Below are positions 1 to 18,584 of a stretch of 58,871 bases of DNA, piece after piece. Made by a program: the position numbers and the translations under genes. The first letter of the stretch is position 1; every line of letters starts with the position of its first letter. Under the pieces are notes generated by a model. It was not told the origin of the DNA. It saw nothing but the letters and a program-made list of their open reading frames with translations, and made no database searches. Source of the DNA: Fonticula alba ATCC 38817 (lineage: Eukaryota > Protista > Nucleariida); the NCBI GenBank assembly GCA_000388065.2, contig KB932205.1; one strand, written 5' to 3'.

Positions 1-3000
1 GCCGGCGGGCCTTCGCGTGTTTATAGGCCCGACAACGCGCGCGACCACTCTCCCTGGCCCAGGGGTCGCCCGGAGGCGGCGGGCTCTCGCCGAATTGCCC
101 CAATGGCCACGTTGCTTCGCCCGGGGCCCCCGGGCGCCGGCCCCGGTGTGCCCCCTTGGGCGGACGCTCCGCCCGATGCCGCAGGACAATGGTCCCGCCC
201 GCCGCACAGTGCCGGCGAGGCCCCGAGCGCGGAGCAATATACCGCGGGCGAGCAGGTCGCCGGGGGCTCTCCGTGTCCAGGGCAAGGCGGGGCCCGGGGG
301 CCGTGGGGTGGCCACCACGGCGGCGTCCCCCCCGGCCCCCACTCCGGTGCACACGCGTGCCCGCCCGCCCAGGTCGATAAGCTACGCCCGGGCCAGCTGC
401 TGTGGCCGAGGCTCTCCGTGCCCCTTTGTGCTGGTGCTTTGCCTGGTCGCATCGCGGGTGCTTGCCCGCGCGCGGTGGCGATTTGCCAGGATTTGGTAGC
501 CACGCACCGGTGTGTGGTGGACGTATGCGCGCGCGCGCGCATGTGCCCGCGGCGCACGCCTGTCGAGAGAGAAAAAGAGAGAGTGGACCCTGGAGGGGGG
601 CGGGGTGTCGTGGCCACGGGCGGACAACGGGGGCGGAGGGCCTGTTCTAGCGGCCGGCGCTGAAACAGCCTTTCCACCACCATCGCTGACCTCTGTTCCG
701 GGCATGGTCCCCGGCCTCTCGGCCCGGTGCCACCATTGTTGCTTGGCTCATGCTGTCCCTCGGCCCGCCCCCCCCCCCTGCCCCGCGGCCGCGCGGCTGG
801 GCGCATCTCTCCGGGCAACGGGAGAACGGCGTGACGGAGGCCAAGCCCCGGGCATGTGTGTGTGTGTGCGTTCCTCGTCCCCTGCCCGCGCGCCGGCCAA
901 CCGGACGCCGGGGGCCCCGCCCGGGGCGCCCGCCCGCGGAGACGCGGCGCCGGTTGGCCGGACCCAGGAGGCCAGGCAGGTACCGCTGGCCGGCGTGCCG
1001 CCAGCACCACCGGGAACCGGTCGGCCCCTGTGTGGCAGGGCCTCGCCCGGGAGTGCGGCGAGACTTGCCCAGGGGCCCGGCCGGCGCGAGGGATATTAGG
1101 CTGCCAGGTTGGCCCGGGCGTCGCGCCCGGGGCCCCGGCCGGCCCCCCCCCCTCCCCCCCGGGGGGACCTCCAGCCGGGGGACGTCGGGGACAGCCGACG
1201 GGATAGACCTCAATAACCGATGGGGCCTGGTGCATGCGCGCGCGCGCGCACGGAAAGAGCGACGCGGCGACGAGGACCGGCCAAGTGAAAGGCCGCCGGG
1301 GAAATCCCACACCGCACCCGCGCCACGCCCGCGCGGGGCCTCCCGGGGCGGCTGGCCGGCGAATCCTAGGTTGCTGGGCCGCGGCCGACAGGCTTCCAAG
1401 GTGCGCATGCGCCCCGGGGCCCCGGGAATCCGAGTCCCCCGGACGTCCTCCGGCCGGGACGAGGGCGCCAGCCTGGTGGACTCGGCCCTGCCCCGCGTGC
1501 AAGGCACACTTCCGCGAAGCGGCTCGCATGGTGCACTTTCTTGTCGCGGGCCCAAGCGGTCATTTGGCCCCCGCCCCCGGTCCCCTGTCCCCGGGCCCGC
1601 GCGGCTGTGGCACCTGGGGGCCGGGCGCCTGGCGCCCAGCGCTCCGGCTCGTCAGCTCGGCAATTTCTTCGGCGCCCCGGGGCCCGGCGGCGTGAATGAA
1701 TCCCAGAAGCTCATTAGTCGGGCGCCGGGGTTCACACTGCCTTGGGTCGCTCTGTGCACTCCCCCCCCCCCTGTCCCCCGCGCCCCCCCCCCCCCCTGGC
1801 CGCGCGGCGCTGGTGGCAGCCTTCTTCGCACGGCCGCCCCCAGGGCGCGGCCGCGGCCGCGGCCGGGCTTCCGATGCTCTTCCCGGAAGAGGGGCCTTCG
1901 GCCGTCGTCTGGTATTCCTGGCGCGCGGGCATGCGCGCGCGCGCGCGCGTGCGCCGAGCGGACGCCCCAGCGACTTTGGGCGTGCCGGGCCGAGAGGTCT
2001 CAGCAAGAGCAGGTCCGCCCCCCCCCCCCCCTATACCCCCCGCCCCCCCTGGTATGCCCCTTCGTCGTCGCGCCCGACCTCGCGGCTGCAGGCGACGCGG
2101 CGGGCTGTTGCATTTTTCCTGCACCGCCTCGGGCCCGGAAATTGTCTCTCCCGTCCTCGGAAGTATTAATCGTGGTCTGTTTTTCCAGCGAAGGCATGGA
2201 CAACCCTGCCAAGGGGGCGGGGGGCGGGGGGGGGGGGGGGGGGTGACCATGCGCCTGTCCATCCTCTTCCCGTGCACACGCGCGCGCGCGCACACGCGCA
2301 CACGCTCGGCAGATCACCGACCCCGAAAGCGCGATAGAGAGAGGGAGATCGGCCAGACGCCGAGGTGCATGCTTCCAGGCGGGCCTCCCGAGGAGGCAGA
2401 GGTTCCCAGGGCGAGCTCGGTCGGCGATGGGCCGGGTTCGCCAGCCGTCGGAAAAATAGCCCCCGAGTATGCCCCCCCCCCCCTGGCTCTCTCCTCCGCG
2501 CCGGTGCCGGGGCCGCCTCCAGGTCCATGGGTACGTGAGCGTTCCTACGAGAGCAGCTCGTTCCAGAAGAAGGCGTGGGCGCACAGGCTGGAGTACCGCC
2601 TGCCCTGGCGCCGGCCACCGGCGCCCCCCGCGCCCCAGGGGAGAACCGGCCCGTGGGGCGCCGGCCTGGACACGGGGGAGGGGCTGGGGAAACGGCCAGG
2701 CCCGGGGGTCCACCCGCACGCCCACTCGCACACCCACACACACACACACACACATACACACACGGAAAGGCGGAGGGCACCTCCCCCGCGCACAACATAC
2801 ATGCCCCTCAGTCGCGGCAGGCCGCGCCACTCCGGCCAGGTGGTGCGCGCCCGAAAGCCAAGCACCCCACACACACGGGCCCCCGGCCCGTCCGGGGGCG
2901 AGCCACTCTTAACAGAGCCACCTCCAGGGGCGGCCAGCGCGGCCGCCGTCTCCGACCGGCCGTCTGCGCCCCCGCCGAGCGAGCCCTCGTGCCCCGTTCG

Positions 3001-5758
3001 TTTTTCCCGACCGGCGATTGAACCAGGCACGACCCCCCCGGCCCGTGAAGCGCCTGTGTCCGCACGAGCCCCGGGCCTGTGTGTGCGCATGCGGGCACCA
3101 CCCACTCCGCCGGGCCTCTCCCCCCTCCCGCCCCCCACACAAGGGGGCTGGGGGGCGGGGGGGGAAGACCACCAGACGGGCCCCCGCCCCGACACTCCAT
3201 CTCCCCCCCCCCCCCCCCCCAGGGGCGAGGGAGGGGGAAGCAACAGCATCTGGATCAGAGAACACCCTACAGGCGTGCTTGTGCGCGATCTCCCCGCCGG
3301 CCGGAGAGACATGCCCGGCCTGGGGCCACCCCCGGCTCCGAGGCACTTCTCCAGAAAGGCCCACCCCTTGTGGCCTCCGTCCGTCTGAGGGAGGGGCACA
3401 ACGAGGGGGTGGGGGGGCTTACACCGGAAACGCACCGCACTGCCCGGGGTTCGGCCGCGCACCAGGCTGCCGCTCCCTTATGCTGTCCGGCCCTCCGGGC
3501 CTCTCGCCGCGCGGCGGAGCTCACACGCACGCGCACGGCCGAAGGGCCAGCCGGCACCAGGCCGCCACGCACACGCAGCCGCCAGGGGGCCACAGGGCGC
3601 TTTGCCCGCGCGATTGATTGCCAGGCACCGAGCCGTGGGCCGGAGATCCCCGGGTGCAGATCGCTCGCGCGCCACCCGCGCCCTGCCGGATCCGCCCCCC
3701 TCCCCCGCCGGAGGCGGAGGGATGTCCGTGGCCGTGATGGGAGCCATGAAAGCTTGTCGTTCTTGTCCCGCGCGCCTGCGCCCGGGTCTCGGATCCGCGG
3801 TGCCCCCCCCCCCCCCCCCCNNNNNNNNNNNNNNNNNNNNNNNNNNNNNNNNNNNNNNNNNNNNNNNNNNNNNNNNNNNNNNNGGGCAGGGCAGGGCAGG
3901 GCAGGGCGGGGCGGGGCAGGGCGGGGCGGGGGCGGAGGACGCGGGGGTCAACACAGCCACGCCCACACACCCGCGCCTGTGTACGCAGATGTGCGCGACA
4001 CCACTATGCCGCCCATTGTGGGCCGAATCCCCGGCAGGAATCGGTATCTGCCTTTGCACACTCCTCTCACCCCCCGGCCCCCCGGCTCCCCGGCCCCGAC
4101 GAGGAGTAAGGCGCGTCTTTCGCGACTCTTCCCCCACACCATCCGCGCACCTGGGCGCTTGCAACCACCACCCTCCCGAGGCCCTTGCGAGGGAGTTAAA
4201 GAATTGCTCCCACACAGGCACCCCGCCGGGAGGAGAATACACACCACACTCCGGGTTCCTTTACCTCCCCTCTTTCGTCCGCCTCGCGCTCGCATTCCCC
4301 CATTCCCCCCCCCCCCCCATATACACACGCCGCCTCGCACGCGCATCTCCGTGACAGGTAGCTCGGGATCTCAACCTCCCCCCATCCATCTTCCTCAGCG
4401 CCCCTCGCCGCTCTGCATCTCCTGCCTCGCGGTAAGTCCCCTGCTCATCCCCCTTGTCCTGTGCGCCCTCTCTCCTGCCCGGTGCTAACCCGTCACCCGG
4501 GGCCGCAGTCCATCGTGTGTGCATCCCCATCTCCCCCCCCCCCTCCTCTCTCTCTCTCTCCTCCTCCAGAGCTTGCACTTGTGCATCCCCTTCAAGGCAA
4601 ACAAGTGTGTATGAGTGCCTCGCTCGCACGCCCCCTGCCCTGACCCTCCTTCCCCCCCNNNNNNNNNNNNNNNNNNNNNNNNNNNNNNNNNNNNNNNNNN
4701 NNNNNNNNNNNNNNNNNNNNNNNNNNNNNNNNNNNNNNNNNNNNNNNNNNNNNNNNNNNNNNNNNNNNNNNNNNNNNNNNNNNNNNNNNNNNNNNNNNNN
4801 NNNNNNNNNNNNNNNNNNNNNNNNNNNNNNNNNNNNNNNNNNNNNNNNNNNNNNNNNNNNNNNNNNNNNNNNNNNNNNNNNNNNNNNNNNNNNNNNNNNN
4901 NNNNNNNNNNNNNNNNNNNNNNNNNNNNNNNNNNNNNNNNTTTTTTTCTCGCTCGCGCACGCCCGTGCCCGCTCCTTGTCCCCTTTCCTCCCTTCCGCAT
5001 GTCACACCTCTCGGTGGCGGATCGAATCGCACGCGCGAGGGTCTGCCCCATGCCCCCCTCCTGAGGACACGGCGACCAACGAACACGGGCTTCTCCGCCG
5101 AGCACACACACACACACACACGCACATCCGCCCGCGCGCGCACACACTTGTCCTGTCTTGCCATCCCCCCCCCCCCCATCCCCCATCCCCCATCTCGCCC
5201 TGAGTGCTTCCTCGTGTCTTGAGGCTGCTCTCCTTCCCCTTCTCTCCCCTTCTTTGGCTGACTCGTGTAACCACCTGCTCTTCCCCCTACCGTCGTCGCT
5301 TTGGGCCTCGGTTGACCGGCTGGCCACTCGCCCCCTCCTCCCTCTTCCGCCCTCCTCCGCCCTCCTCCGCCCTCCTCCGCCCTCTTCGGCCTCTCCCTCC
5401 ACAACCGTACGCATCGTCCCTCTCCTCCTCCTCCTCCTCCCCCTCCTCCTCCCCCTACCCCAGATTGTGTCTGTGTCCGGTGCAAACTTTGTGAGCGAGT
5501 CAACAAGTGGGTGTGTGTGTGTGTGTGTGCACGCGTGCATATCTCCGTGAGCGAGTGAGTGAGTGCGTGTGCGTGTGCTCCCGTCCGGCCTCCACCCCTC
5601 TCCTATCCCCTCAAGGGAGCACCCCATCGGGTCCGCCCTCGTGTGATACACATCGCCTGTGAGAGCGCATGCGCGCGTGCCCCCCTCCCTCGCCTCCTCC
5701 TCCTCCTCCTCCCCGGCACGGCTCGTCTCCTTTCCCCCCCTTCGCTGCCACTCGCGGC

Positions 5759-8700
5759 ATGCTCTTCCCCTTCACGTCGCAGTCGCTGATCGCCGCGGCC
5801 GACTCATTTCGCACGCAGTCACCCCCCTCGACTGCCATTGAGCCGACCACCAGCAACCCACAGCTCCGGCCAGTCTCCTCCTCAGTCAACACTGACCCTT
5901 CCAGCGCTGTTGCCTACTCTTCTTCCTCCACCGCCTCCACTTCCGCCCCATCCTCCTCTGCTGCGCCTCCTCTCGCCATGGTCGATGCTGCCCCTCCCCC
6001 CATGACGGCTCCTCGCTCGCCTGGCCTTCTCCCCACGGTCCTGGCGGTGGCCATCGGCGGTGCTTCTTCTTCACGGACACCCGCCTCCCTGCCCTTCGCC
6101 ATGGCGGCCCCCCTGGCCTCGACCGCCTCCTCCACCGACTACATCGATGATGATGACGACGACGACGATGACCATTCATTGGTCCTGCTTCCGGCATCCA
6201 TCGATCCGGCCACTCCCCCGGCAATCGCCCCGTCCGCCCCGCTGTCGGTCTTCTTCTCTCCAGCTCGCTCTACCAAGGTCACCCCCTACCGTCAGGTGCC
6301 CTCGTCCTTGGTCACCTCTCCTGTGGGCTCTCCCCCTCTGGCTCCCTCTGAACAGCCATCTTCATCGACGACGACGCCGACGACGACGTGTCCCCCGTCT
6401 CCGTGTCCCCCTTCCCCGTCCTCCCCCCCCTTGCAACACATGAGGCCGACGACTCCCGATTCTGATACTTGTTCTTTGTCATCTTTTCTGGAGTCCCTTT
6501 CTGCCGAAGACCCTGCATCTGGCGTTGACAGCCTAAAGAGCCCCTCCGACAGAAGCAGCATCCACAGCGGCGCCCTGCTTGAGGACCCCGCTAGCCTGGA
6601 CCCCAACTACCACCACCTGTCCTCTTCCTCCTCGATTGCCGCCCTCCCCGCGGCCAACGACGACGGGCCCGCCTCCCTCTCCGTGCGTGGTCTCCACTCT
6701 CTGGTCCCATCTCGGGACTCCTTCCTCCTCCTCCTCTTCTTCTTCTTCTTCTCCCTTTCCCTCTCGCTCTCCGCCCTTCATCCCGCCGTATGTCTGTCCA
6801 CCTTCGTGCTTACCCATATGTCCCCCACACCGCATGCCGGCCGGCTCTCCACACCTCCACACCTCCACCACCACCACCACCACCCCAGCAGCGTGGTAAC
6901 TCCATCTCCACGGTCAGCCTCGCATCCAGCACGGCCACCGGCTCATCGCTCAATCTCCAGCACCTGCCCACTCGCGTGCTGGTTCGCTCGCCATCCATCG
7001 TCTCCTCGGCGTCCACCTGCTCGGCAACTTCCACGTCTTCCTCCTCCTCCGGCAAGACCTCCTTCCTATCCCGGCGCAAGCAGGCCACCGTTGGCATGCC
7101 TGTTTCTCCGGCTGCCAGTAACAGCACCATTTCTAGCCTGGCCAGTGGTCCCACCGTCAACGCCGCCACCAGCACCAGCCACAGCACCAGGATGCACTCG
7201 GCATCTTCCACCTCCTCCATGCACCTGGATTCGCCGGGCGGCGAGCATGCCGGCGCCGGCACGCATGCCCTCCCCACGGCCCCGACCTCCAGCCATGGGT
7301 CACCGACCGGGGCCTTCGGCATGACCAAGCAGTCGGCCTTCAACCACAGCGAGGACTTTACCACCGCCTCGACTCCGGCCTCGGCGCCCCAGACCCCCAT
7401 CCGGCCCAGTCACCTGCAAGTGTCCGCCAACGATGCCATCCTCCGGGCGGAATCTTCACCGGGGCTGGCGCCTGCCTCGGCGGCTGCCGGATCGGCGGCC
7501 GCCTCCATGCCCGCCTCGCCGGCCACCAGCAGCCAGTATTTGGCCGCCGTGACGGCCTCCACCCCTGGGGGTGGGAATTCCACCCCCGGGTCACGCTCGA
7601 TGTCGGCCTCGCCCTCGATCAACTTTTCGATGGAGCGCATTTCGTCCTACGACACGCGCTCCGAGCAGGCCATGGGCACCATCCAGCGGGGTGCCCGGTC
7701 GGTCAACATGTTCTCCATCAACCGGAAGATGATCACCGACAAGCTCTTCAACCGGTCCATGATGAAGTCCCCGGCCGACATGCTGGACTTCACGGTGGAG
7801 GATGCGGTGCTGAATTCCGACCTCCGGGCCGCGCTCATTACTTTTGCTTCGTCGGAATTCTCCGAGGAGAATGTCATCTTCCTGGGGGATGTCATTTCGC
7901 TGAAGCGCAATCGCGACTGGCACCGCATCGAGGAGATGGTCCGCGAGTATATCCACACCGACTCGCCGATGGCCCTGAACATCGAGTACAAGACGCGCGA
8001 CACCATCCTCAAGCGCGTGTCGCTCTTGACACCGGAGTACCTGGATTCCATGACCGATGACGATGACATCACCCTCTTTGATACGGCCTTCAAGGAAATT
8101 GTCCGCCTGGTGGAGACCAATGTCTTCCCGCGCTTCAAGGCCCAATACTTGGCCGCGCGCAATGTCAAGCCCATGGTCGATGTCATTGACCACACTCGCC
8201 GCGTGGTCATCGTCGGTGGCGGCATGGTTGGTGCTTATGCGGCCCTCCTGCTGGACCAGATGCCTCGGTTCCATGTGACCCTCATCGATACCAAGGAGTA
8301 CTTCGAGTTTACGCCCGGCATTACGCAGGTGTTCGCCGATCCGAGCAAGGTCGATCGCTTCCGTCTTCCCCATGCGTCGTACCTGCGCAATGGCCGCATC
8401 ATCGTTGGCCATGTGAATTCCATCACCCCGACCAGCGTGCGGGTGGAGAATGTCGATCACCCGTGCGATTACATGATCTTCGCCAGTGGGTCTTCCTACA
8501 ATTCCCAGATCAAGGGCCGCAACGTCACCACCGCCTATCGGACCAAGAAGGTGACCAATGAGTTCCAAATCCTCCAGCGCGCTCGGCGGGTATTGATCAT
8601 CGGCGGTGGTGCTGTCGGTGTGCAATTGGCCGCTGAGTTTGCCGAGAAGTTCCCCGAGAAGAAGATTTCCCTTGTGAGTTCCAATCCGCTGCTTTTGCGG

Positions 8701-9330
8701 CGGTTGCCTTCCTCGGCTCACCAGCTGGCCAAGATGTACCTCCAGTCCATGGGGGTGCAGCTGATCCTCGGAGAGCGTGTCATCGGTATCGATCAATCTG
8801 GCACCATCCTGCAGACCGACAAGGGGACCATCCTCGAATGTGACAAGTTCTACCTGGCCGTCGGCCTCATTCCTCAGACCAAGTACCTGCAAAATTCCCT
8901 CCCCTCGCTGGTGGATGAGGATGGCTTCATCACCGTCACCAACACCCTGCAGGTGGAGGGCTATTCGCACATGTTCGCCGGGGGTGATTCCTCCAATCTC
9001 CCATGCGAGAAGCTGGCCATCGCCGCTGCCTCCCATGGTGTTACCATTGCTCGGAATATTTGCCGTCTAGAAAAGGCCCGGCCGCCGCTGGTTCTCGGAG
9101 AAAAGGGCACCGCCTCCTCCTCAGATCGGCCCATTGCCCAGATCGTGTCGATCGGCGGGCAAACGGCCATCTTCGCCGTGCGCGGCATGCAGGCCATGGC
9201 CAACAAGAAGTTCCTGAAGACCAAGGACAAGTTCGAGCGCGATATGATCAACTCCCTTCACCACAAGGCCCCGATCCATGTGCTCCTCGGCAAGCCGCCG
9301 CGGCCACTGAAGGCTGGCCCCCGTCCTTGA
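5759..9330 (+). CDS. RGS domain + AIFM2/FSP1(AMID)-like FAD/NAD(P)H oxidoreductase fusion protein with long S/T/P/A-rich N-terminus (~1121 aa)
   Basis: Exons 5759-6682 and 6889-9330. The phase-0 intron runs GTGCGT (6683) to CAG (6888), with an alternative CAG at 6891. RGS box at ~7786-8150 (TFASSEFSEENVIFL...EYIHTDSPMALNIEYKTR...LFDTAFKEIVRLVETNVFPRF). Reductase at ~8197-9327 with two Rossmann motifs (VVIVGGGMVG, VLIIGGGAVGVQLAAE), TLIDTKEYFEF, YMIFASGS and HMFAGGD. The start codon is uncertain; upstream exons may lie in the gapped region. Confidence 0.85.
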
Positions 9331-11265
9331 TGTTTATGTATATGTATGCGTGTGCATGTGTATGTATATATTTGTGTATATATATGTATATACGCGCACA
9401 ACCACGCGACATCTCTCCCCCCCTCTTCCCCCTCCCCCTTTCTCCCTTCGCTTCGCCATGGGGCTTCTCCTCTGTGGGATGGCCAATTGCATGTGCCGCG
9501 CGCGCCCCCGTATCTAAGTGTGAGAACGAGAGGGGAAATATGGGAACGAGGCGGGCAGGGCGGGGCACATGTCCGCGTGTGCGCGCGGGGGTGCACCTGT
9601 ATGTCTTCCGCTCTTCAGCATGTCCGATGTCGCCGCGCGCTGGTCCCCGGGGCCTCGGACTGTGTGTGTCCCCATGTACAGCGCCCCGTCATCCTCCTTC
9701 TCTCCCCCTCCCTCCCTCTATGTGAGGTTTTTGTGCCCTTGGAGGAGATCAAGCGTGCGCGTGTGCACATGGATATTTCCGGCACCTGCCACTCCCCTCC
9801 CCCTCTATCTCTCTGTCTGCCCCTATCTCCTCCTCCTCCCTCTGGTGTTCGCGTGTGTGTGTGTGTGTGCGCGCGCGCGCGCATTTCGCCCTGTCGTGTG
9901 TACCCTCCCCCGCTGGCAGTGTCCATTTCCAACCACCACCACGCGCACCAGCACGGGCAGTCTCCCCCTTCCCCCCCCCCCTTCACAAGCAGGAAACCGC
10001 GCGGGCTGTTCGCGGATCCCTATATATAGATCACCGCCCTCCCCTACTACCTTCCTTCCCCCTCTCCCCCCCTATTTTTCCCTGCTCCCTCCTGAACACC
10101 CGATCTGTCTTCCCTTCCCTCCCTGTGGTGATTCCGACGTGATGTGCCGTGCACAACACCTTGCTCCCATTTGAACTACAAAATACTCTCTTCTCTTTTT
10201 CTCCCTTATATACAACTTCTCTTTTGGCGGTCATGCGTGGGCAATGGCAATGCCTTTCTTCCCTTTCGCCTCTCTCTGCCCTTCGAAAAAATTTTGTACC
10301 TTCCCTGGTTTCTTTTCGATCTGTGTATACCGTGCCATCCGCTTTCCCTTGGGCACATGCCCACCCGAGCATGGTGCATGCCGGTATATGTGCATGCAAT
10401 CGAGAGGCAGAATATGTACATCTCCCGGTTATGTATATACAGTTACATATATATATATATATATTTTTATACAGTTTATATTTACGGTTATATATTTTAC
10501 AGGTGTGCAGCCACCCACCGCATGAGATACCGTCTCCCTACTCCCTGCTAGTGGCCCTCCGGCGCTTTTCCTCCTCCATCCCACGCGCCGGCGGAAGCAC
10601 ATCTGGACAATGTCCGCCAGTTTTGGCCCAACCTCCAATCCATAAAGACAAGCGAGATACTCCTCGCCGTGCTCTCTTGTGGGGTGGGGGGGGGGGGGGG
10701 AGGCGCAAGAGGTGTGGGCCACCTGGGCCGAGAAGTTTGCGGGTGGAGGGGGAAGCCAGGGACCCCGGGCATATGGTCGCCTTCGGATGACCAATGATCC
10801 GGCTGCCCTGCTCTTCAACGAGCCATGCCACCGCACCATCCTCAAGTCTCCTCAACGGGGGCGTGTTTTGCTGATCAACATAGCAACGATCTCGCCGTTT
10901 GGTTGACGATCGGACAAAGGCCAGAGTGTGGGGTGGAGAGGATGCAAGTGTACCATGCCTAGGGTGCACACATGCTTCGATAAGCTCAGGTGTATGTATG
11001 GGTGGGGGAGGGGAGAAAGAGAGAGAGAGAAAGAGAGAGATAACGAGAGGAAGAGAGGATGAGAGAGGGCGAGAGGGGGTGAGGGGGAGGTGAATCTATC
11101 AAAAACAGAGGCCAACGGATGAAGAACAGGCGGTGGCACCAGGCCGGAGCCCTGACAGACTGGTTGAGCCACTGTCTCGGATAGGGGGAGAGGCAGGGGA
11201 TCGCACTCGAAAAGGCACCCGCGGACAAGAGCCATCCCTCATGAAACAATGGCAGTAAGGGCATC

Positions 11266-15343: not shown

Positions 15344-18300
15344 ATGTGTGCGTGTCCTTCTCCTCGCTGGTCTTCTCTCTCTCTCTCTCTCCCTCTCCCT
15401 CTCCCTCTCCATCTGGCTCGCCTCCTCCCAGGACCTCCTGCTAACCTTCTGCATCCCCCTTCGTCCCTGGGCACGCCGCTTACACACGCACACACACACA
15501 CACACACACCAGCCGGTCCCCAGGCTAACCCCTTCCAGAAGGTCCAGCAGGACCTCGTCGTCGGCGAGAAGGCTTTCAAGTACTTCTCCATCCCGGCCCT
15601 GAACGACAAGCGTGTCGAGCAGCTCCCTTTCTCCATCCGTGTGCTGCTTGAGGCGGCCATTCGTAACTGCGACGAGTTCGTCGTCAACTCCTCCGATGTC
15701 GAGAACATCCTTGACTGGGTCAACACCAGCGAGAAGGACATCGAGATCCCCTTCAAGCCCTCTCGTGTGGTCCTCCAGGATTTCACGTGCGTACCCACGC
15801 CGCTCCTCCCCCCCCCTTGCTTGCCCGGCCCTGCCCCTGGCCCTGTCGCTGTCTCCCTTCCCCTCCTTCCCCCTTCCCCCTCCCTCCCCCGCACGCGTCG
15901 ATGACTCACTCCTGCCCCTCCCCATGCCCACAGTGGTGTCCCCGCTGTCGTGGACTTCGCCTCCATGCGTGACGCCATGACCCGCCTGGGTGGTGACCCG
16001 GAGAAGATCAACCCCCTGGTCCCGGCTGACCTGGTCATCGATCACTCCGTCCAGGTCGACTTCTTCGGCACGTGCGTCCGCTGTCTCATCTCCTGCCTCG
16101 CTTTGGCCCATTTGCCGGCCTCCCCCCTTTTCTCCCGTTCTTCCCCCTCCGCCTTTCCCACCCTTCTCTTCATCTTGCCCCCGAAATCCACCCCCACTCA
16201 CAATGCCCCTCCCCCCTCGCCCCCCCCCCCCCGCTGTTCCCTCCTCTTCCTCTCCCCCTCCTCTCCCCATGCGCACAAACAGCGGCGACGCCTACCAGAA
16301 GAACATGGACCTCGAGTTCGAGCGCAACATCGAGCGCTTCCAGTTCCTCAAGTGGGGCGCTGAGGCCTTCAAGAACATGTTCATCGTTCCCCCCGGCTCC
16401 GGCATTGTCCACCAGGTGAACCTGGAGTACCTCGCCCGCCAGGTCTTCCACGACTCCGAGACCGGCACCCTCTACCCGGACTCCGTCGTCGGTACCGACT
16501 CTCACACCACCATGATCAACGGCCTCGGCATTGTTGGCTGGGGTGTCGGCGGTATCGAGGCCGAGGCCGTCATGCTTGGCCAGGCCATCTCCATGGTCCT
16601 GCCCAAGGTCATCGGCTTCAAGCTGACCGGTACCCTGAGCGCCACCGCCACCGCCACCGATCTGGTCCTGACCGTCACCCAGATGCTCCGTGCCAAGGGT
16701 GTCGTCGGCAAGTTCGTCGAGTTCTTCGGCCCCGGCTGTGCTTCCCTGTCCATCGCCGATCGCGCCACCATCTCCAACATGGCCCCGGAGTACGGCGCCA
16801 CCGTGGGCTTCTTCCCGGCCGACGGCAACACCATCAGCTACCTGCGCCAGACCGGTCGCGATGAGGAGCGCCTGGCTTACATCGAGGCTTACCTCAGGGC
16901 CCAGAACCTCTTCCGTGACTATGCCACTTCCGGCTCTGCCGAGGACTCGGTCGTCTTCACCGATGTCCTCGAGCTGGACCTGGCCACCGTGGCCCCCTGC
17001 CTGTCTGGCCCCAAGCGCCCGCACGACCGCGTCCTGCTGAGCGCCATGAAGCAGGACTTCGCCTCCTGCCTGACCAACAAGGTCGGCTTCAAGGGGTTCG
17101 GCATTGCCGAGGAGAAGCTCGCCACTTCTGTCCCCTTCCAGTATGAGGGCCAGTCTTACGACCTGACCCACGGGTCGGTGGTCATCTCCGCCATCACCTC
17201 CTGCACCAACACCTCCAACCCCGATGTCCTGGTGGCGGCCGGTATGCTGGCCCGCAATGCCGTGGAGGCTGGCCTCTCGGTCAAGCCCTACATCAAGACC
17301 TCCCTGTCTCCCGGGTCCGGTGTGGTCACCAAGTACCTGGAGCACTCCGGCCTGCAGACCTACCTGGACAAGCTCGGCTTCTCCGTTGCCGGGTACGGTT
17401 GCATGACTTGCATCGGTAACTCCGGTCCCCTGCCGGAGGCCGTGTCGGCCGCCATCGAGGCTGGCGATCTGGTCGCCGGTGCGGTGCTCTCCGGTAACCG
17501 CAACTTCGAGGGCCGTGTCAACCCCCACACCCGTGCCAACTACCTGGCCTCGCCGCCCCTGTGTGTGGCCTACGCCCTGGCTGGCAACCTGAACGTCGAC
17601 TTCGAGACCGAGCCCATCGGCACCGGCAAGGATGGCCAGGCCGTTTTCCTGAAGGACATCTGGCCCTCTCGCGAGCAGATCCAGGCCGCCGTCAAGGAGC
17701 ACTTCCTGCCCAGCATGTTCAAGGAGGTCTATGATGGCATCACCACCGCCAACGAGTCCTGGAACAAGCTCCAGCCCCCCACCGGTCGCCAGTACGCCTG
17801 GGACACCGAGTCCACTTACATCAAGTGCGCTCCCTTCTTCGATGGTGTCAAGGGTGCCGACACCGAGCCCATCCAGCCCATCATCGGTGCCCGGTGCCTG
17901 CTGAATGTCGGCGATTCCATCACCACCGATCACATTTCCCCGGCCGGGTCGATTGCCAAGAACTCGGCCGCCGCGCGCTACCTGATGGAGCGCGGTGTGG
18001 CCCCTCGTGACTTCAACTCCTACGGTGCTCGCCGTGGTCATGATGAGGTCATGGCTCGTGGTACCTTCGCCAATGTGCGCCTGGCCAACAAGCTGGCCCC
18101 GGCCGTCGGCCCCAAGACCACGCACTTCCCCTCGGGCGAGCTGCTCGATGTCTTCGATGCCGCTGCTCGCTATGGCTCTGAGAAGGTGCCGCTTGTCATC
18201 CTGGCCGGTGCCGAGTATGGTTCCGGTTCTTCTCGTGACTGGGCCGCCAAGGGTCCCTTCCTGCAGGGTGTCCGCGCCGTTGTGGCCGTCACCTATGAGC

Positions 18301-18584
18301 GCATCCACCGCTCCAACCTGGTCGGCATGGGTATCATCCCCCTGCAGTTCAAGGAGGGCGATTCCGCTGATGCCCTTGGCCTGACTGGCAAGGAGACCTT
18401 CGACATTGCCCTGCCCGATGACATCCGCCCTGGCATGGACATCACTGTGGCTGCTGTGGCCGATGACGGCCAGCGCACCGAGTTCCAGGCTGTCCTGCGC
18501 TTCGATACCGAGGTTGAGATTGTCTACTTCCGCAACGGCGGTATCCTGCAGTACATGCTCCGCAAGCTGCTGACCGGCAACTAG
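15344..18584 (+). CDS. ACO1: Cytosolic aconitate hydratase / iron-regulatory protein 1 (AcnA/IRP family), 905 aa
   Basis: Exons 15344-15347, 15513-15786, 15934-16071 and 16283-18584. Begins MSGPQANPF with no mitochondrial presequence. Motifs: [56 protein letters not shown] and [12 protein letters not shown] (three 4Fe-4S Cys), [22 protein letters not shown]. Confidence 0.97.

What the first reader, a model, noticed from the sequence alone, without database searches (positions are those of the whole stretch)
7780..9330. RGS domain fused directly to an AIFM2/FSP1-like NAD(P)H oxidoreductase, both in one exon
Seen: one uninterrupted exon encodes a complete RGS box (~7786-8150), a ~15-aa linker and a full two-Rossmann AIFM2/AMID-type flavoprotein (~8197-9327), so the fusion cannot come from mis-splicing. 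Known: RGS boxes are GAPs or binders for heterotrimeric G-alpha subunits; AIFM2/FSP1 proteins reduce CoQ or vitamin K with NAD(P)H, suppress lipid peroxidation and are linked to cell death. I know of no characterised protein with this architecture. Inference: active G-alpha could recruit the reductase to membranes, replacing the N-myristoyl anchor FSP1 uses, which is impossible here because the domain is C-terminal and the predicted start is MLFP. Alternatively, NAD(H)/FAD state could tune GAP activity. Either would couple GPCR signalling to redox or lipid-peroxidation control, possibly during aggregation.
Basis: partly seen in the sequence, partly recalled or inferred. Interest (0 to 1): 0.85.

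Follow-up and report, generated by a model that had tools for sequence, protein, structure and literature searches.

The report
RGS box fused to FSP1-like reductase
A Fonticula alba gene really does encode, in one exon and one mRNA, a G-protein "off-switch" (RGS) domain joined to an FSP1/AIFM2-type flavin reductase; the fusion is not unique but belongs to an old, uncharacterised family found in early-branching fungi and some other protists.

Summary
The window gene (CDS 5759-6682 + 6892-9330, + strand) matches an annotated 1120-aa Fonticula alba hypothetical protein exactly. Its last exon encodes an RGS box (aa 615-731), a ~12-aa linker and an FSP1/AIFM2-like two-Rossmann flavoprotein (aa 744-1120). 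RNA-derived contigs are spliced at the annotated intron and cross the domain junction without a break.

The RGS box is of the canonical GAP type. Its best sequence and fold matches are RGS1, 16, 8 and 2. The G-alpha contact residues equivalent to RGS4 S85, E87, N88, N128 and R167 are kept, and position 163 is Asn, as in RGS2.

The reductase matches FSP1 best by sequence and by fold and keeps the FAD and NAD(P)H motifs. In this paralog the catalytic Glu (human FSP1 E156) is Gln, and the C-terminal domain is not recognisably FSP1-like.

The fusion is not unique. Fonticula has three paralogs; the scan flagged the other two on other pieces of this genome. The same architecture occurs in Parvularia, chytrids, Blastocladiomycota, Zoopagomycota, Mucoromycota and a cercozoan. 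A marine-protist clade carries a degenerate RGS. I found no paper on the fusion.

Most likely it is a G-alpha-binding GAP that tethers or gates a membrane quinone reductase. That mechanism is inferred, not shown.

The parts
5759..6682 (+). Exon 1 of the annotated model (aa 1-308): Ser/Thr/Pro-rich low-complexity N-terminus with a poly-Asp run and no Pfam domain
   Evidence: Joined to exon 2, its translation equals P0001. No Pfam hit. RNA contigs cover it only from about 6220 onward.
6683..6891 (+). Intron, 209 nt, GT..AG
   Evidence: Sequence read. RNA contigs in four runs skip it: pieces end at 6682 and resume at 6898, with 6 ambiguous letters between.
6892..9330 (+). Last exon (aa 309-1120 plus stop): low-complexity region, RGS box, linker and reductase in one open frame
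   Evidence: A single contig piece 6898-9321 with 0 differences and 0 gaps in each of four runs.
7810..8160 (+). RGS box (aa 615-731) of the R4-like, GAP-type
   Evidence: Pfam PF00615 36.9-37.5 bits against cut-off 23.9. phmmer finds RGS1 at 9e-8, then RGS5, 2, 8 and 16. The AF2 model has pLDDT 92, and its Foldseek hits ranked 1-42 are all classical RGS domains, led by RGS1/16/8/3/2/4, most with TM 0.6-0.8.
7978..7980 (+). Codon of N671, equivalent to RGS4 Asn128, the Asn that contacts the G-alpha switch region in the transition state
   Evidence: Alignments to RGS1, 2, 5 and the RGS4 ranges. It is the only invariant column among 16 family RGS boxes.
8161..8196 (+). Short linker (aa 732-743). 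The N-[VI]-x-P motif shared with Mucorales (aa 732-735, NVKP) sits at its start
   Evidence: Alignment A1. Low pLDDT (about 47) in the two-domain model.
8197..9054 (+). FAD- and NAD(P)H-binding Rossmann domains of an FSP1/AIFM2-like flavoprotein (aa 744-1029). GGGMVG is at 8215-8232, GGGAVG at 8602-8619 and GGD at 8980-8988
   Evidence: Pfam PF07992 116 bits. FSP1 scores 1.7e-25 with the single sequence and 1.7e-40 with the family profile; the next family scores 2e-19. Foldseek finds hFSP1 8yo8 at E 7e-27, TM 0.77 by target. Motifs located.
8623..8625 (+). Codon CAA = Q886, at the position of human FSP1 catalytic/proton-relay Glu156 (GxGxxGxE)
   Evidence: Alignment to 8wik and the motif and residue table. 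The RNA contigs show no difference here. The same Gln is in paralog P0003; paralog P0002 and all fungal orthologs have Glu.
9055..9327 (+). Family-specific C-terminal domain (aa 1030-1120) with nearly invariant K1086, E1090, G1108, P1111 and L1114
   Evidence: Conservation in A1. No PDB sequence match. Model positions 452-480 (aa 1051-1079) have pLDDT below 50, so equivalence to the FSP1 CTD is unproven.

Best explanation
This is a genuine Fonticula alba gene for a two-module cytosolic protein. It belongs to an old eukaryotic family in which a GAP-type RGS box sits about 12-25 residues upstream of an FSP1/AIFM2-like NAD(P)H flavoprotein.

Shown here:
- Both domains lie in one exon and one spliced mRNA.
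- The RGS box keeps the residues that RGS4 and RGS1 use to grip the switch regions of an activated G-alpha.
- The reductase keeps the FAD and NAD(P)H binding motifs.
- The family looks like the product of a single fusion.

Inferred: the RGS box binds a lipid-anchored G-alpha-GTP at the membrane. It thereby accelerates GTP hydrolysis and also brings the flavoenzyme, which lacks FSP1's N-myristoyl anchor, to its lipophilic substrate. G-protein activation would then be coupled locally to quinone or lipid-radical reduction. In this paralog the catalytic Glu is Gln, so the reductase may be slowed. It may then act more as an NAD(P)H/FAD-binding regulatory module than as a high-turnover enzyme.
For: - Gene and transcript.
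- RGS identity: Pfam score above the gathering cut-off. The nearest solved sequences are R4-class RGS proteins. The AF2 model has pLDDT 92, and its Foldseek hits ranked 1-42 are all classical RGS domains; the one RGS-RhoGEF chain comes only at rank 43, and many top hits are complexes with G-alpha-i, -o or -q.
- Contact residues: S632, E634, N635, N671 and R722 match RGS4 S85, E87, N88, N128 and R167. N718 matches RGS2 Asn184. That Asn is visible in natural RGS2 bound to G-alpha-q (4ekc) and is Asp in the engineered G-alpha-i binder (2v4z).
- The Asn128 equivalent is the only invariant RGS column across nucleariids, fungi and Cercozoa.
- Reductase: FSP1 is the top hit by sequence and fold. The D41, K43, G150, E160, G244, D285 and K293 equivalents are kept. 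These are the residues shown to matter in FSP1 (PMC10643123).
- No MG start, so no myristoylation.
- Family breadth and the single-fusion pattern.
Against: - No binding, GAP or reductase activity was measured.
- I could not confirm that Fonticula encodes a G-alpha, because no query sequence was available from the tools.
- Q886 replaces the Glu whose Ala mutant inactivates human FSP1 on CoQ1 (PMC10516921). Y296 is Ile.
- The C-terminal domain forms the quinone pocket and the dimer in FSP1. Here it has no sequence match to FSP1 and is poorly modelled, so the electron acceptor is unknown.
- Fungal orthologs have lost the D163 and R167 equivalents.
- A marine clade keeps the RGS-derived fold without N88 or N128. 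This shows the domain can be retained for something other than GAP action.
- AF2 gives no confident inter-domain geometry.
Confidence: 0.5

Rival explanations
1. Redox-gated GAP. The flavoprotein module works mainly as a sensor of NAD(P)H/NAD(P)+ or flavin state. Its conformation or dimerisation controls access to the RGS box, so metabolic or respiratory state sets the lifetime of G-alpha-GTP. Catalytic turnover is secondary.
For: - The catalytic Glu is Gln in this protein and in its sister paralog, while the cofactor-binding motifs stay intact.
- The linker is very short and partly conserved (N-[VI]-x-P in nucleariids and Mucorales), which suggests tight mechanical coupling.
- One relative (P0164) has a fully degenerate reductase but an intact RGS triad.
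- Mucorales orthologs carry a conserved KRRASL (PKA-consensus) tail, which points to integration with G-alpha/cAMP signalling.
Against: - Most family members, including Fonticula paralog P0002 and all fungi, keep every catalytic residue. That argues for real turnover in the family.
- Gln occurs naturally at this position in about 3% of bona fide NDH-2 enzymes (PMC5299459), so Q886 need not mean loss of catalysis.
- FSP1 dimerisation is reported not to depend on NADH, unlike AIF (PMC10516921).
Confidence: 0.2
2. The RGS box no longer acts on G-alpha. It serves as a helical scaffold, for dimerisation, membrane binding or another partner, attached to an ordinary FSP1-like quinone reductase. This would resemble the RGS-homology domains of sorting nexins, axin or GRKs.
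For: - The Picozoa/Amoebophrya/marine clade keeps a homologous domain (hhalign probability 97%) without the N88 and N128 equivalents.
- Fungal orthologs lack the D163 and R167 equivalents.
- The presence of G-alpha in Fonticula was not verified here.
Against: - In this protein five of six key contact residues are canonical and the sixth copies RGS2.
- The catalytic Asn is the single invariant RGS residue across nucleariids, fungi and Cercozoa. That is hard to explain without G-alpha transition-state binding.
- The structural neighbours ranked 1-42 are all classical RGS domains.
Confidence: 0.2
3. Annotation or assembly artefact: two neighbouring genes, an RGS gene and an AIF-like gene, wrongly merged.
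For: The 5' part of the gene model is weakly supported. There is no contig coverage upstream of about 6220, and an unexplained loose end sits at 6276.
Against: - There is no stop codon and no frame change between the domains.
- Spliced RNA contigs cross the junction in four runs.
- The same adjacency with a similarly short linker occurs in two paralogs and in dozens of species from several phyla.
Confidence: 0.02

Closest known systems
R4-class RGS proteins (RGS1, RGS2, RGS4, RGS8, RGS16)
   Same: The predicted model is all-helical with the RGS-box fold. These are the best sequence and structure matches. The RGS4 S85, E87, N88, N128 and R167 equivalents are present, and Asn sits at the 163 position as in RGS2.
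   Different: R4 proteins are small, with an RGS box plus an amphipathic N-terminal helix. Here the box is preceded by about 600 low-complexity residues and is followed directly by a flavoenzyme. A 12-residue acidic insertion lies between helices 6 and 7. Trp92 is Leu.
FSP1 / AIFM2 (ferroptosis suppressor protein 1), NAD(P)H:quinone oxidoreductase
   Same: It is the top PDB hit by sequence (E 1.7e-40 with the family profile) and by fold (TM 0.77). Both GxGxxG motifs and the D41, K43, E160, G244, D285 and K293 equivalents are conserved.
   Different: There is no N-terminal MGxxxS myristoylation signal. E156 is Gln and Y296 is Ile in this paralog. The C-terminal domain is unrelated at sequence level. 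The fused reductases lie outside the well-supported clade of 24 unfused FSP1-like representatives.
[quoted passage not shown]
   Same: Same two-dinucleotide-binding-domain fold and the same GxGxxGxE proton-relay logic. They are the second tier of fold hits. Gln naturally replaces the Glu in about 3% of NDH-2s (PMC5299459).
   Different: Similarity is much weaker than to FSP1 (E 2e-19 against 1e-40). NDH-2 enzymes use C-terminal amphipathic helices for membrane binding.
Multidomain RGS proteins that join a G-alpha-binding box to an effector or enzyme module (RGS-RhoGEFs, GRKs, 7TM-RGS)
   Same: The design principle is the same: an RGS box brings another activity under G-alpha control or to G-alpha's location.
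   Different: The partner module here is a redox flavoenzyme. I found no described example of that.

Membership tests
RGS domain (PF00615), GAP-competent class | Profile match above the curated threshold | tested here: met
   36.9-37.5 bits against gathering score 23.9, E 3-5e-9.
RGS domain (PF00615), GAP-competent class | All-helical RGS-box fold | tested here: met
   AF2 model of aa 605-742 has pLDDT 92 and pTM 0.83. DSSP finds 7 helices there and 9 in the two-domain model. Foldseek hits ranked 1-42 are all classical RGS domains, most with TM 0.6-0.8 and rmsd about 2.3-3.7 A.
RGS domain (PF00615), GAP-competent class | G-alpha switch-contact residues (RGS4 S85, E87, N88, N128, D163, R167) | tested here: met
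   S632, E634, N635, N671 and R722 are identical. Position 163 is Asn (N718), as in natural RGS2. N671 is invariant in the family.
RGS domain (PF00615), GAP-competent class | Binds G-alpha-GDP-AlF4 and accelerates GTP hydrolysis | not testable with these tools
   Needs biochemistry.
RGS domain (PF00615), GAP-competent class | A G-alpha partner is encoded in the same genome | not tested
   No tool-derived G-alpha query was available, and the literature look-ups gave no statement for Fonticula.
FSP1/AIFM2-type NAD(P)H:quinone oxidoreductase | Two Rossmann dinucleotide-binding domains with GxGxxG motifs and the GD FAD motif | tested here: met
   GGGMVG at aa 750-755, GGGAVG at aa 879-884, GGD at aa 1005-1007. 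The D41, K43 and G244 equivalents are present.
FSP1/AIFM2-type NAD(P)H:quinone oxidoreductase | FSP1 is the closest solved relative by sequence and fold | tested here: met
FSP1/AIFM2-type NAD(P)H:quinone oxidoreductase | Catalytic/proton-relay Glu of GxGxxGxE (hFSP1 E156) | tested here: not met
   Gln886 in this protein and in paralog P0003. Glu in P0002 and in 25 of the 30 family members tabulated.
FSP1/AIFM2-type NAD(P)H:quinone oxidoreductase | N-terminal myristoylation motif (MGxxxS) for membrane targeting | tested here: not met
   The reductase starts at aa 744 of 1120, and the annotated start is MLFPFT.
FSP1/AIFM2-type NAD(P)H:quinone oxidoreductase | FSP1-type C-terminal domain with K355 forming the quinone pocket and dimer | tested here: inconclusive
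   No sequence match for aa 1030-1120. Model positions 452-480 (aa 1051-1079) have pLDDT below 50. Foldseek alignments of 374-377 columns reach into this region, but at rmsd 6.1 A. K1086 is a candidate equivalent only.
FSP1/AIFM2-type NAD(P)H:quinone oxidoreductase | NAD(P)H-dependent reduction of CoQ or vitamin K | not testable with these tools
   Needs enzyme assays.

The most novel reading that the evidence does not exclude
The RGS-FSP1 family is a direct physical coupler between heterotrimeric G-protein signalling and membrane redox chemistry. There are two possible directions. Activated G-alpha may recruit or switch on a quinone/lipid-radical reductase exactly where receptors fire. Or the NAD(P)H/flavin state of the enzyme may set how fast G-alpha is switched off. 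In Mucorales the orthologs carry a conserved PKA-consensus tail, so this could be a missing link between respiratory state and G-alpha/cAMP-controlled morphogenesis.
Probability: 0.3. Interest if true: 0.8.

Novelty: new variant of a known kind. Interest (0 to 1): 0.6.

Why it matters
FSP1 is the second main defence against ferroptosis in animals. How FSP1-like enzymes reach membranes and are regulated outside animals is unknown. RGS proteins are the main brakes on G-protein signalling.

A conserved fusion of the two, probably of single origin and kept in nucleariids, most early-diverging fungal phyla and some other protists, implies a selected functional link between G-alpha signalling and NAD(P)H-dependent membrane redox or antioxidant chemistry. 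That link has not been studied.

It is directly testable with recombinant protein, and genetically in tractable Mucorales.

The natural variation offers ready-made separation-of-function variants:
- canonical RGS with Gln at the catalytic Glu (this gene);
- intact reductase with degenerate RGS (the marine clade);
- intact RGS with dead reductase (P0164).

Tried and rejected
- Trypanosomatid origin. I suspected this from the GC-rich, seemingly intron-less sequence. The exact match to a Fonticula alba protein ruled it out.
- Raw RNA-seq reads. Four 2026 runs listed under a 'same species label' (X6, X12, X13, X17) gave zero reads on 5400-9900. They do not contain this organism and are no test. 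Transcript evidence rests on Logan contigs of X1-X4 only.
- The 100-123 nt loose 5' end at 6276. Its 30-mer occurs nowhere in the 58.9-kb window, even with 3 mismatches. It may be an alternative upstream exon outside the window or a chimeric contig; this is unresolved.
- Literature. Ten searches found no paper on an RGS plus Pyr_redox/FSP1 fusion. Anantharaman et al. 2011 (Gene) and supplementary figure S6 of de Mendoza et al. 2014, which catalogue RGS architectures, could not be read. A passing listing there cannot be excluded.
- G-alpha in Fonticula. I had no tool-derived query sequence, and the papers and scan notes gave no direct statement.
- Sequence match of the C-terminal 91 aa to the FSP1 CTD: none.
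- Gene neighbourhood. There is nothing related. The upstream ORFs have no Pfam hits, and an aconitase gene lies about 6.7 kb downstream.
- Inter-domain geometry from AF2. The linker has low confidence and no PAE is available, so no conclusion is possible.
Full report
**1. What is there**

The window is GC-rich (about 57-70% in this region). Position 6790-9330 (+) holds an uninterrupted 846-codon ORF.

Pfam finds an RGS domain (PF00615, 37.5 bits, cut-off 23.9) at ORF residues 341-450. Twenty residues later it finds Pyr_redox_2 (PF07992, 116.8 bits) with a nested Pyr_redox. Against solved structures the C-terminal part matches FSP1/AIFM2 best (E 1.7e-25). The next families (CoA-disulfide reductase and others) score about 1e-9. 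The N-terminal part matches RGS1.

A search of about 5.8 billion proteins returned a 100% identical, 1120-aa 'hypothetical protein, variant' of Fonticula alba, named 'RGS domain-containing protein' by UniRef.

**2. Gene model and transcription**

Joining 5759-6682 to 6892-9330 gives exactly the annotated protein. The intron 6683-6891 begins with GT and ends with AG. Both domains are in the last exon.

Contigs assembled from four RNA-labelled runs of 2012 (two samples) map as 6276/6405-6682, then 6898-9321, then 9402-9841. The intron is precisely removed. There are no differences or gaps across the RGS/reductase junction. The 80-nt hole at 9322-9401 has the same length in the contig and the genome; I read it as one of the repeat stretches the tool skipped, not as an intron.

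The spliced state shows these contigs derive from mRNA. The fusion is therefore neither a mis-splice nor an assembly chimera.

The 5' end is less secure. There is no coverage upstream of about 6220. Two runs carry 100-123 nt before 6276 that match nothing in the window.

**3. The RGS box**

Alone, aa 600-740 hits only classical RGS proteins in the PDB, mostly of the R4 class: RGS1 (9e-8), RGS5, RGS2, RGS8, RGS18, RGS16. An AF2 model of aa 605-742, built on 16 family sequences, has pLDDT 92. Its Foldseek hits ranked 1-42 are all classical RGS domains, most with TM 0.6-0.8, and many are complexes with activated G-alpha-i, -o or -q. The first chain of another architecture, an RGS-RhoGEF, appears at rank 43.

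I mapped residues using the RGS4 ranges reported (query 21-125 to 1agr chain E 73-169). The functional meaning of these RGS4 positions is from established knowledge of the RGS4/G-alpha-i1 structure, not from a tool result.

| This protein | RGS4 equivalent |
|---|---|
| S632 | S85 |
| E634 | E87 |
| N635 | N88 |
| N671 | N128 |
| N718 | D163 |
| R722 | R167 |

The one departure, Asn at position 163, is what natural RGS2 has. The alignments show 'lmeNNsyprf' in RGS2 bound to G-alpha-q (4ekc) and 'lmeNDsyprf' in the engineered G-alpha-i binder (2v4z).

Across 16 fused proteins from nucleariids, four fungal phyla and Cercozoa, the Asn128 equivalent is the only invariant RGS column. The Glu87 equivalent is nearly invariant. 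This pattern is what one expects if binding the G-alpha transition state is the selected function.

**4. The reductase**

A family profile scores FSP1 at E 1.7e-40, against 2e-19 for the next family. The two-domain AF2 model (pLDDT 77) matches human FSP1 first (E 7e-27, TM 0.77 by target), then NDH-2 enzymes.

I compared the protein with the residues shown to matter in FSP1, namely the GxGxxGxE, WxxG and GD motifs and D41, E160 and K355 (PMC10643123). This protein keeps both GxGxxG motifs and the D41, K43, E160, G244, D285 and K293 equivalents.

It does not keep E156. The motif reads GGGAVGVQ (Q886, CAA at 8623-8625). The RNA contigs confirm this codon, and the sister paralog shares it.

Human FSP1 E156A is inactive on CoQ1 (PMC10516921). 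On the other hand, Gln occupies this position naturally in about 3% of NDH-2 enzymes (PMC5299459). Activity is therefore uncertain rather than excluded.

The last ~90 residues are conserved within the family but have no sequence match to the FSP1 C-terminal domain and are poorly modelled. That domain builds the quinone pocket and the functional dimer in FSP1 (PMC10516921). The electron acceptor of this family is therefore not established.

**5. Distribution**

Fonticula has three paralogs:
- this gene;
- H696_04656 (711 aa);
- H696_05598 (1042 aa), whose RGS box is split by a low-complexity insertion of about 450 aa.

These are documented. Other first readers in this scan had flagged the other two on other pieces of this genome.

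An exhaustive profile search of 1.84 billion representatives gave about 28 clusters at 50% identity in which the match runs from the RGS box into the reductase. Named members come from:
- Parvularia atlantis (a nucleariid);
- Synchytrium and Cladochytrium (chytrids);
- Allomyces and Paraphysoderma (Blastocladiomycota);
- Piptocephalis and Syncephalis (Zoopagomycota);
- many Mucorales and Jimgerdemannia (Mucoromycota);
- two proteins of a Cercozoa MAG with Pfam RGS above threshold.

These identifications rest. The ESM Atlas holds a 59-member Mucoromycota cluster with RGS in 98% of members and Pyr_redox_2 in all.

A further clade (Picozoa, Amoebophrya and marine contigs) has an N-terminal domain homologous to the family's RGS box (hhalign probability 97.2%, E 3.5e-11). 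It lacks the N88 and N128 equivalents.

In a maximum-likelihood tree of the reductase domain, 24 unfused FSP1-like representatives form one clade with 100% support. All fused proteins lie outside it, which is compatible with one ancient fusion. The four 'unfused' rows inside the fused part are short. One of them (P0185) shares a 90% cluster with the full-length Allomyces fusion, so I take these rows to be truncated models. The three Fonticula paralogs are monophyletic, and the two Gln-bearing ones are sisters.

No member from Dikarya or animals appeared among the top hits.

**6. Mechanism**

Both modules are under long-term constraint, and each can survive the decay of the other. The marine clade has a degenerate RGS with an intact reductase. 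P0164 has an intact RGS triad with a reductase that has lost D41, K43, E156, G244 and D285. Each module therefore has its own function, and the fusion couples them.

FSP1 must sit on membranes and uses an N-myristoyl anchor.

The most economical reading is that the RGS box docks on lipid-anchored, activated G-alpha. It would act as a GAP and place the flavoenzyme at the membrane. I give this about 0.5.

The main rival is that the flavoprotein reports redox state to the GAP (about 0.2). For this particular paralog the Gln substitution and the short, partly conserved linker favour it. A non-G-alpha scaffold role for the RGS box also gets about 0.2. An artefact is effectively excluded.

**7. Novelty**

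Both domains are textbook families. The combination is already visible in public domain annotations. I found no description or experiment on it in the searchable literature, and two catalogues of RGS architectures could not be read. I rate it a new variant of a known kind: an uncharacterised, conserved RGS subfamily with a redox enzyme as its partner module.

Noticed in passing
window 6220-6276: RNA contigs of runs X2 and X3 carry 100-123 nt upstream of 6276 that match nothing in the 58.9-kb window. No contig covers 5400-6220, which includes the annotated start at 5759. The true 5' end, or the isoform implied by the 'variant' annotation, may differ from the model.
   Followed up: partly
Alignment A1, columns ~880-900 (Mucorales orthologs P0008, P0009, P0012-P0015): The long C-terminal tails of Mucorales orthologs share conserved motifs: EHFTYG and LSPPPPKRRASLT. 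RRxS is a classic PKA consensus site, which suggests feedback from the cAMP/PKA pathway. Fonticula lacks these motifs.
   Followed up: no
P0003 (Fonticula H696_05598), aa ~180-630: The RGS box of this paralog is split between helices 6 and 7 by a low-complexity insertion of about 450 residues (poly-Gly, poly-His, poly-Ala). The window protein has a 12-residue acidic insertion in the same loop.
   Followed up: partly
P0164 (unnamed, 643 aa, from a 63-kb Logan contig): This relative has an intact RGS E/N/N triad, but its reductase has lost the D41, K43, E156, G244 and D285 equivalents. It looks like a natural 'dead-enzyme' version of the fusion.
   Followed up: partly
window 8161-8172 (aa 732-735): The inter-domain linker carries an N-[VI]-x-P motif shared between nucleariids and Mucorales, although AF2 models it with low confidence. 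It may be a docking or hinge element.
   Followed up: no
window 9322-9401: A low-complexity (TG/TA-rich) stretch lies just after the stop codon and was skipped by read laying. The contigs continue to about 9841, so the 3' UTR is at least about 500 nt.
   Followed up: no
window 15990-18584 (+): An ORF with full aconitase domains (PF00330, E 1e-146; PF00694) is the next recognisable gene downstream. Large ORFs upstream (21-5651, both strands) have no Pfam hits and may be GC-rich noise or low-complexity proteins.
   Followed up: no
window 7591-9036 (-): A 481-codon antisense ORF overlaps the reductase-coding region. I take it to be a by-product of GC-rich coding sequence and did not test it.
   Followed up: no
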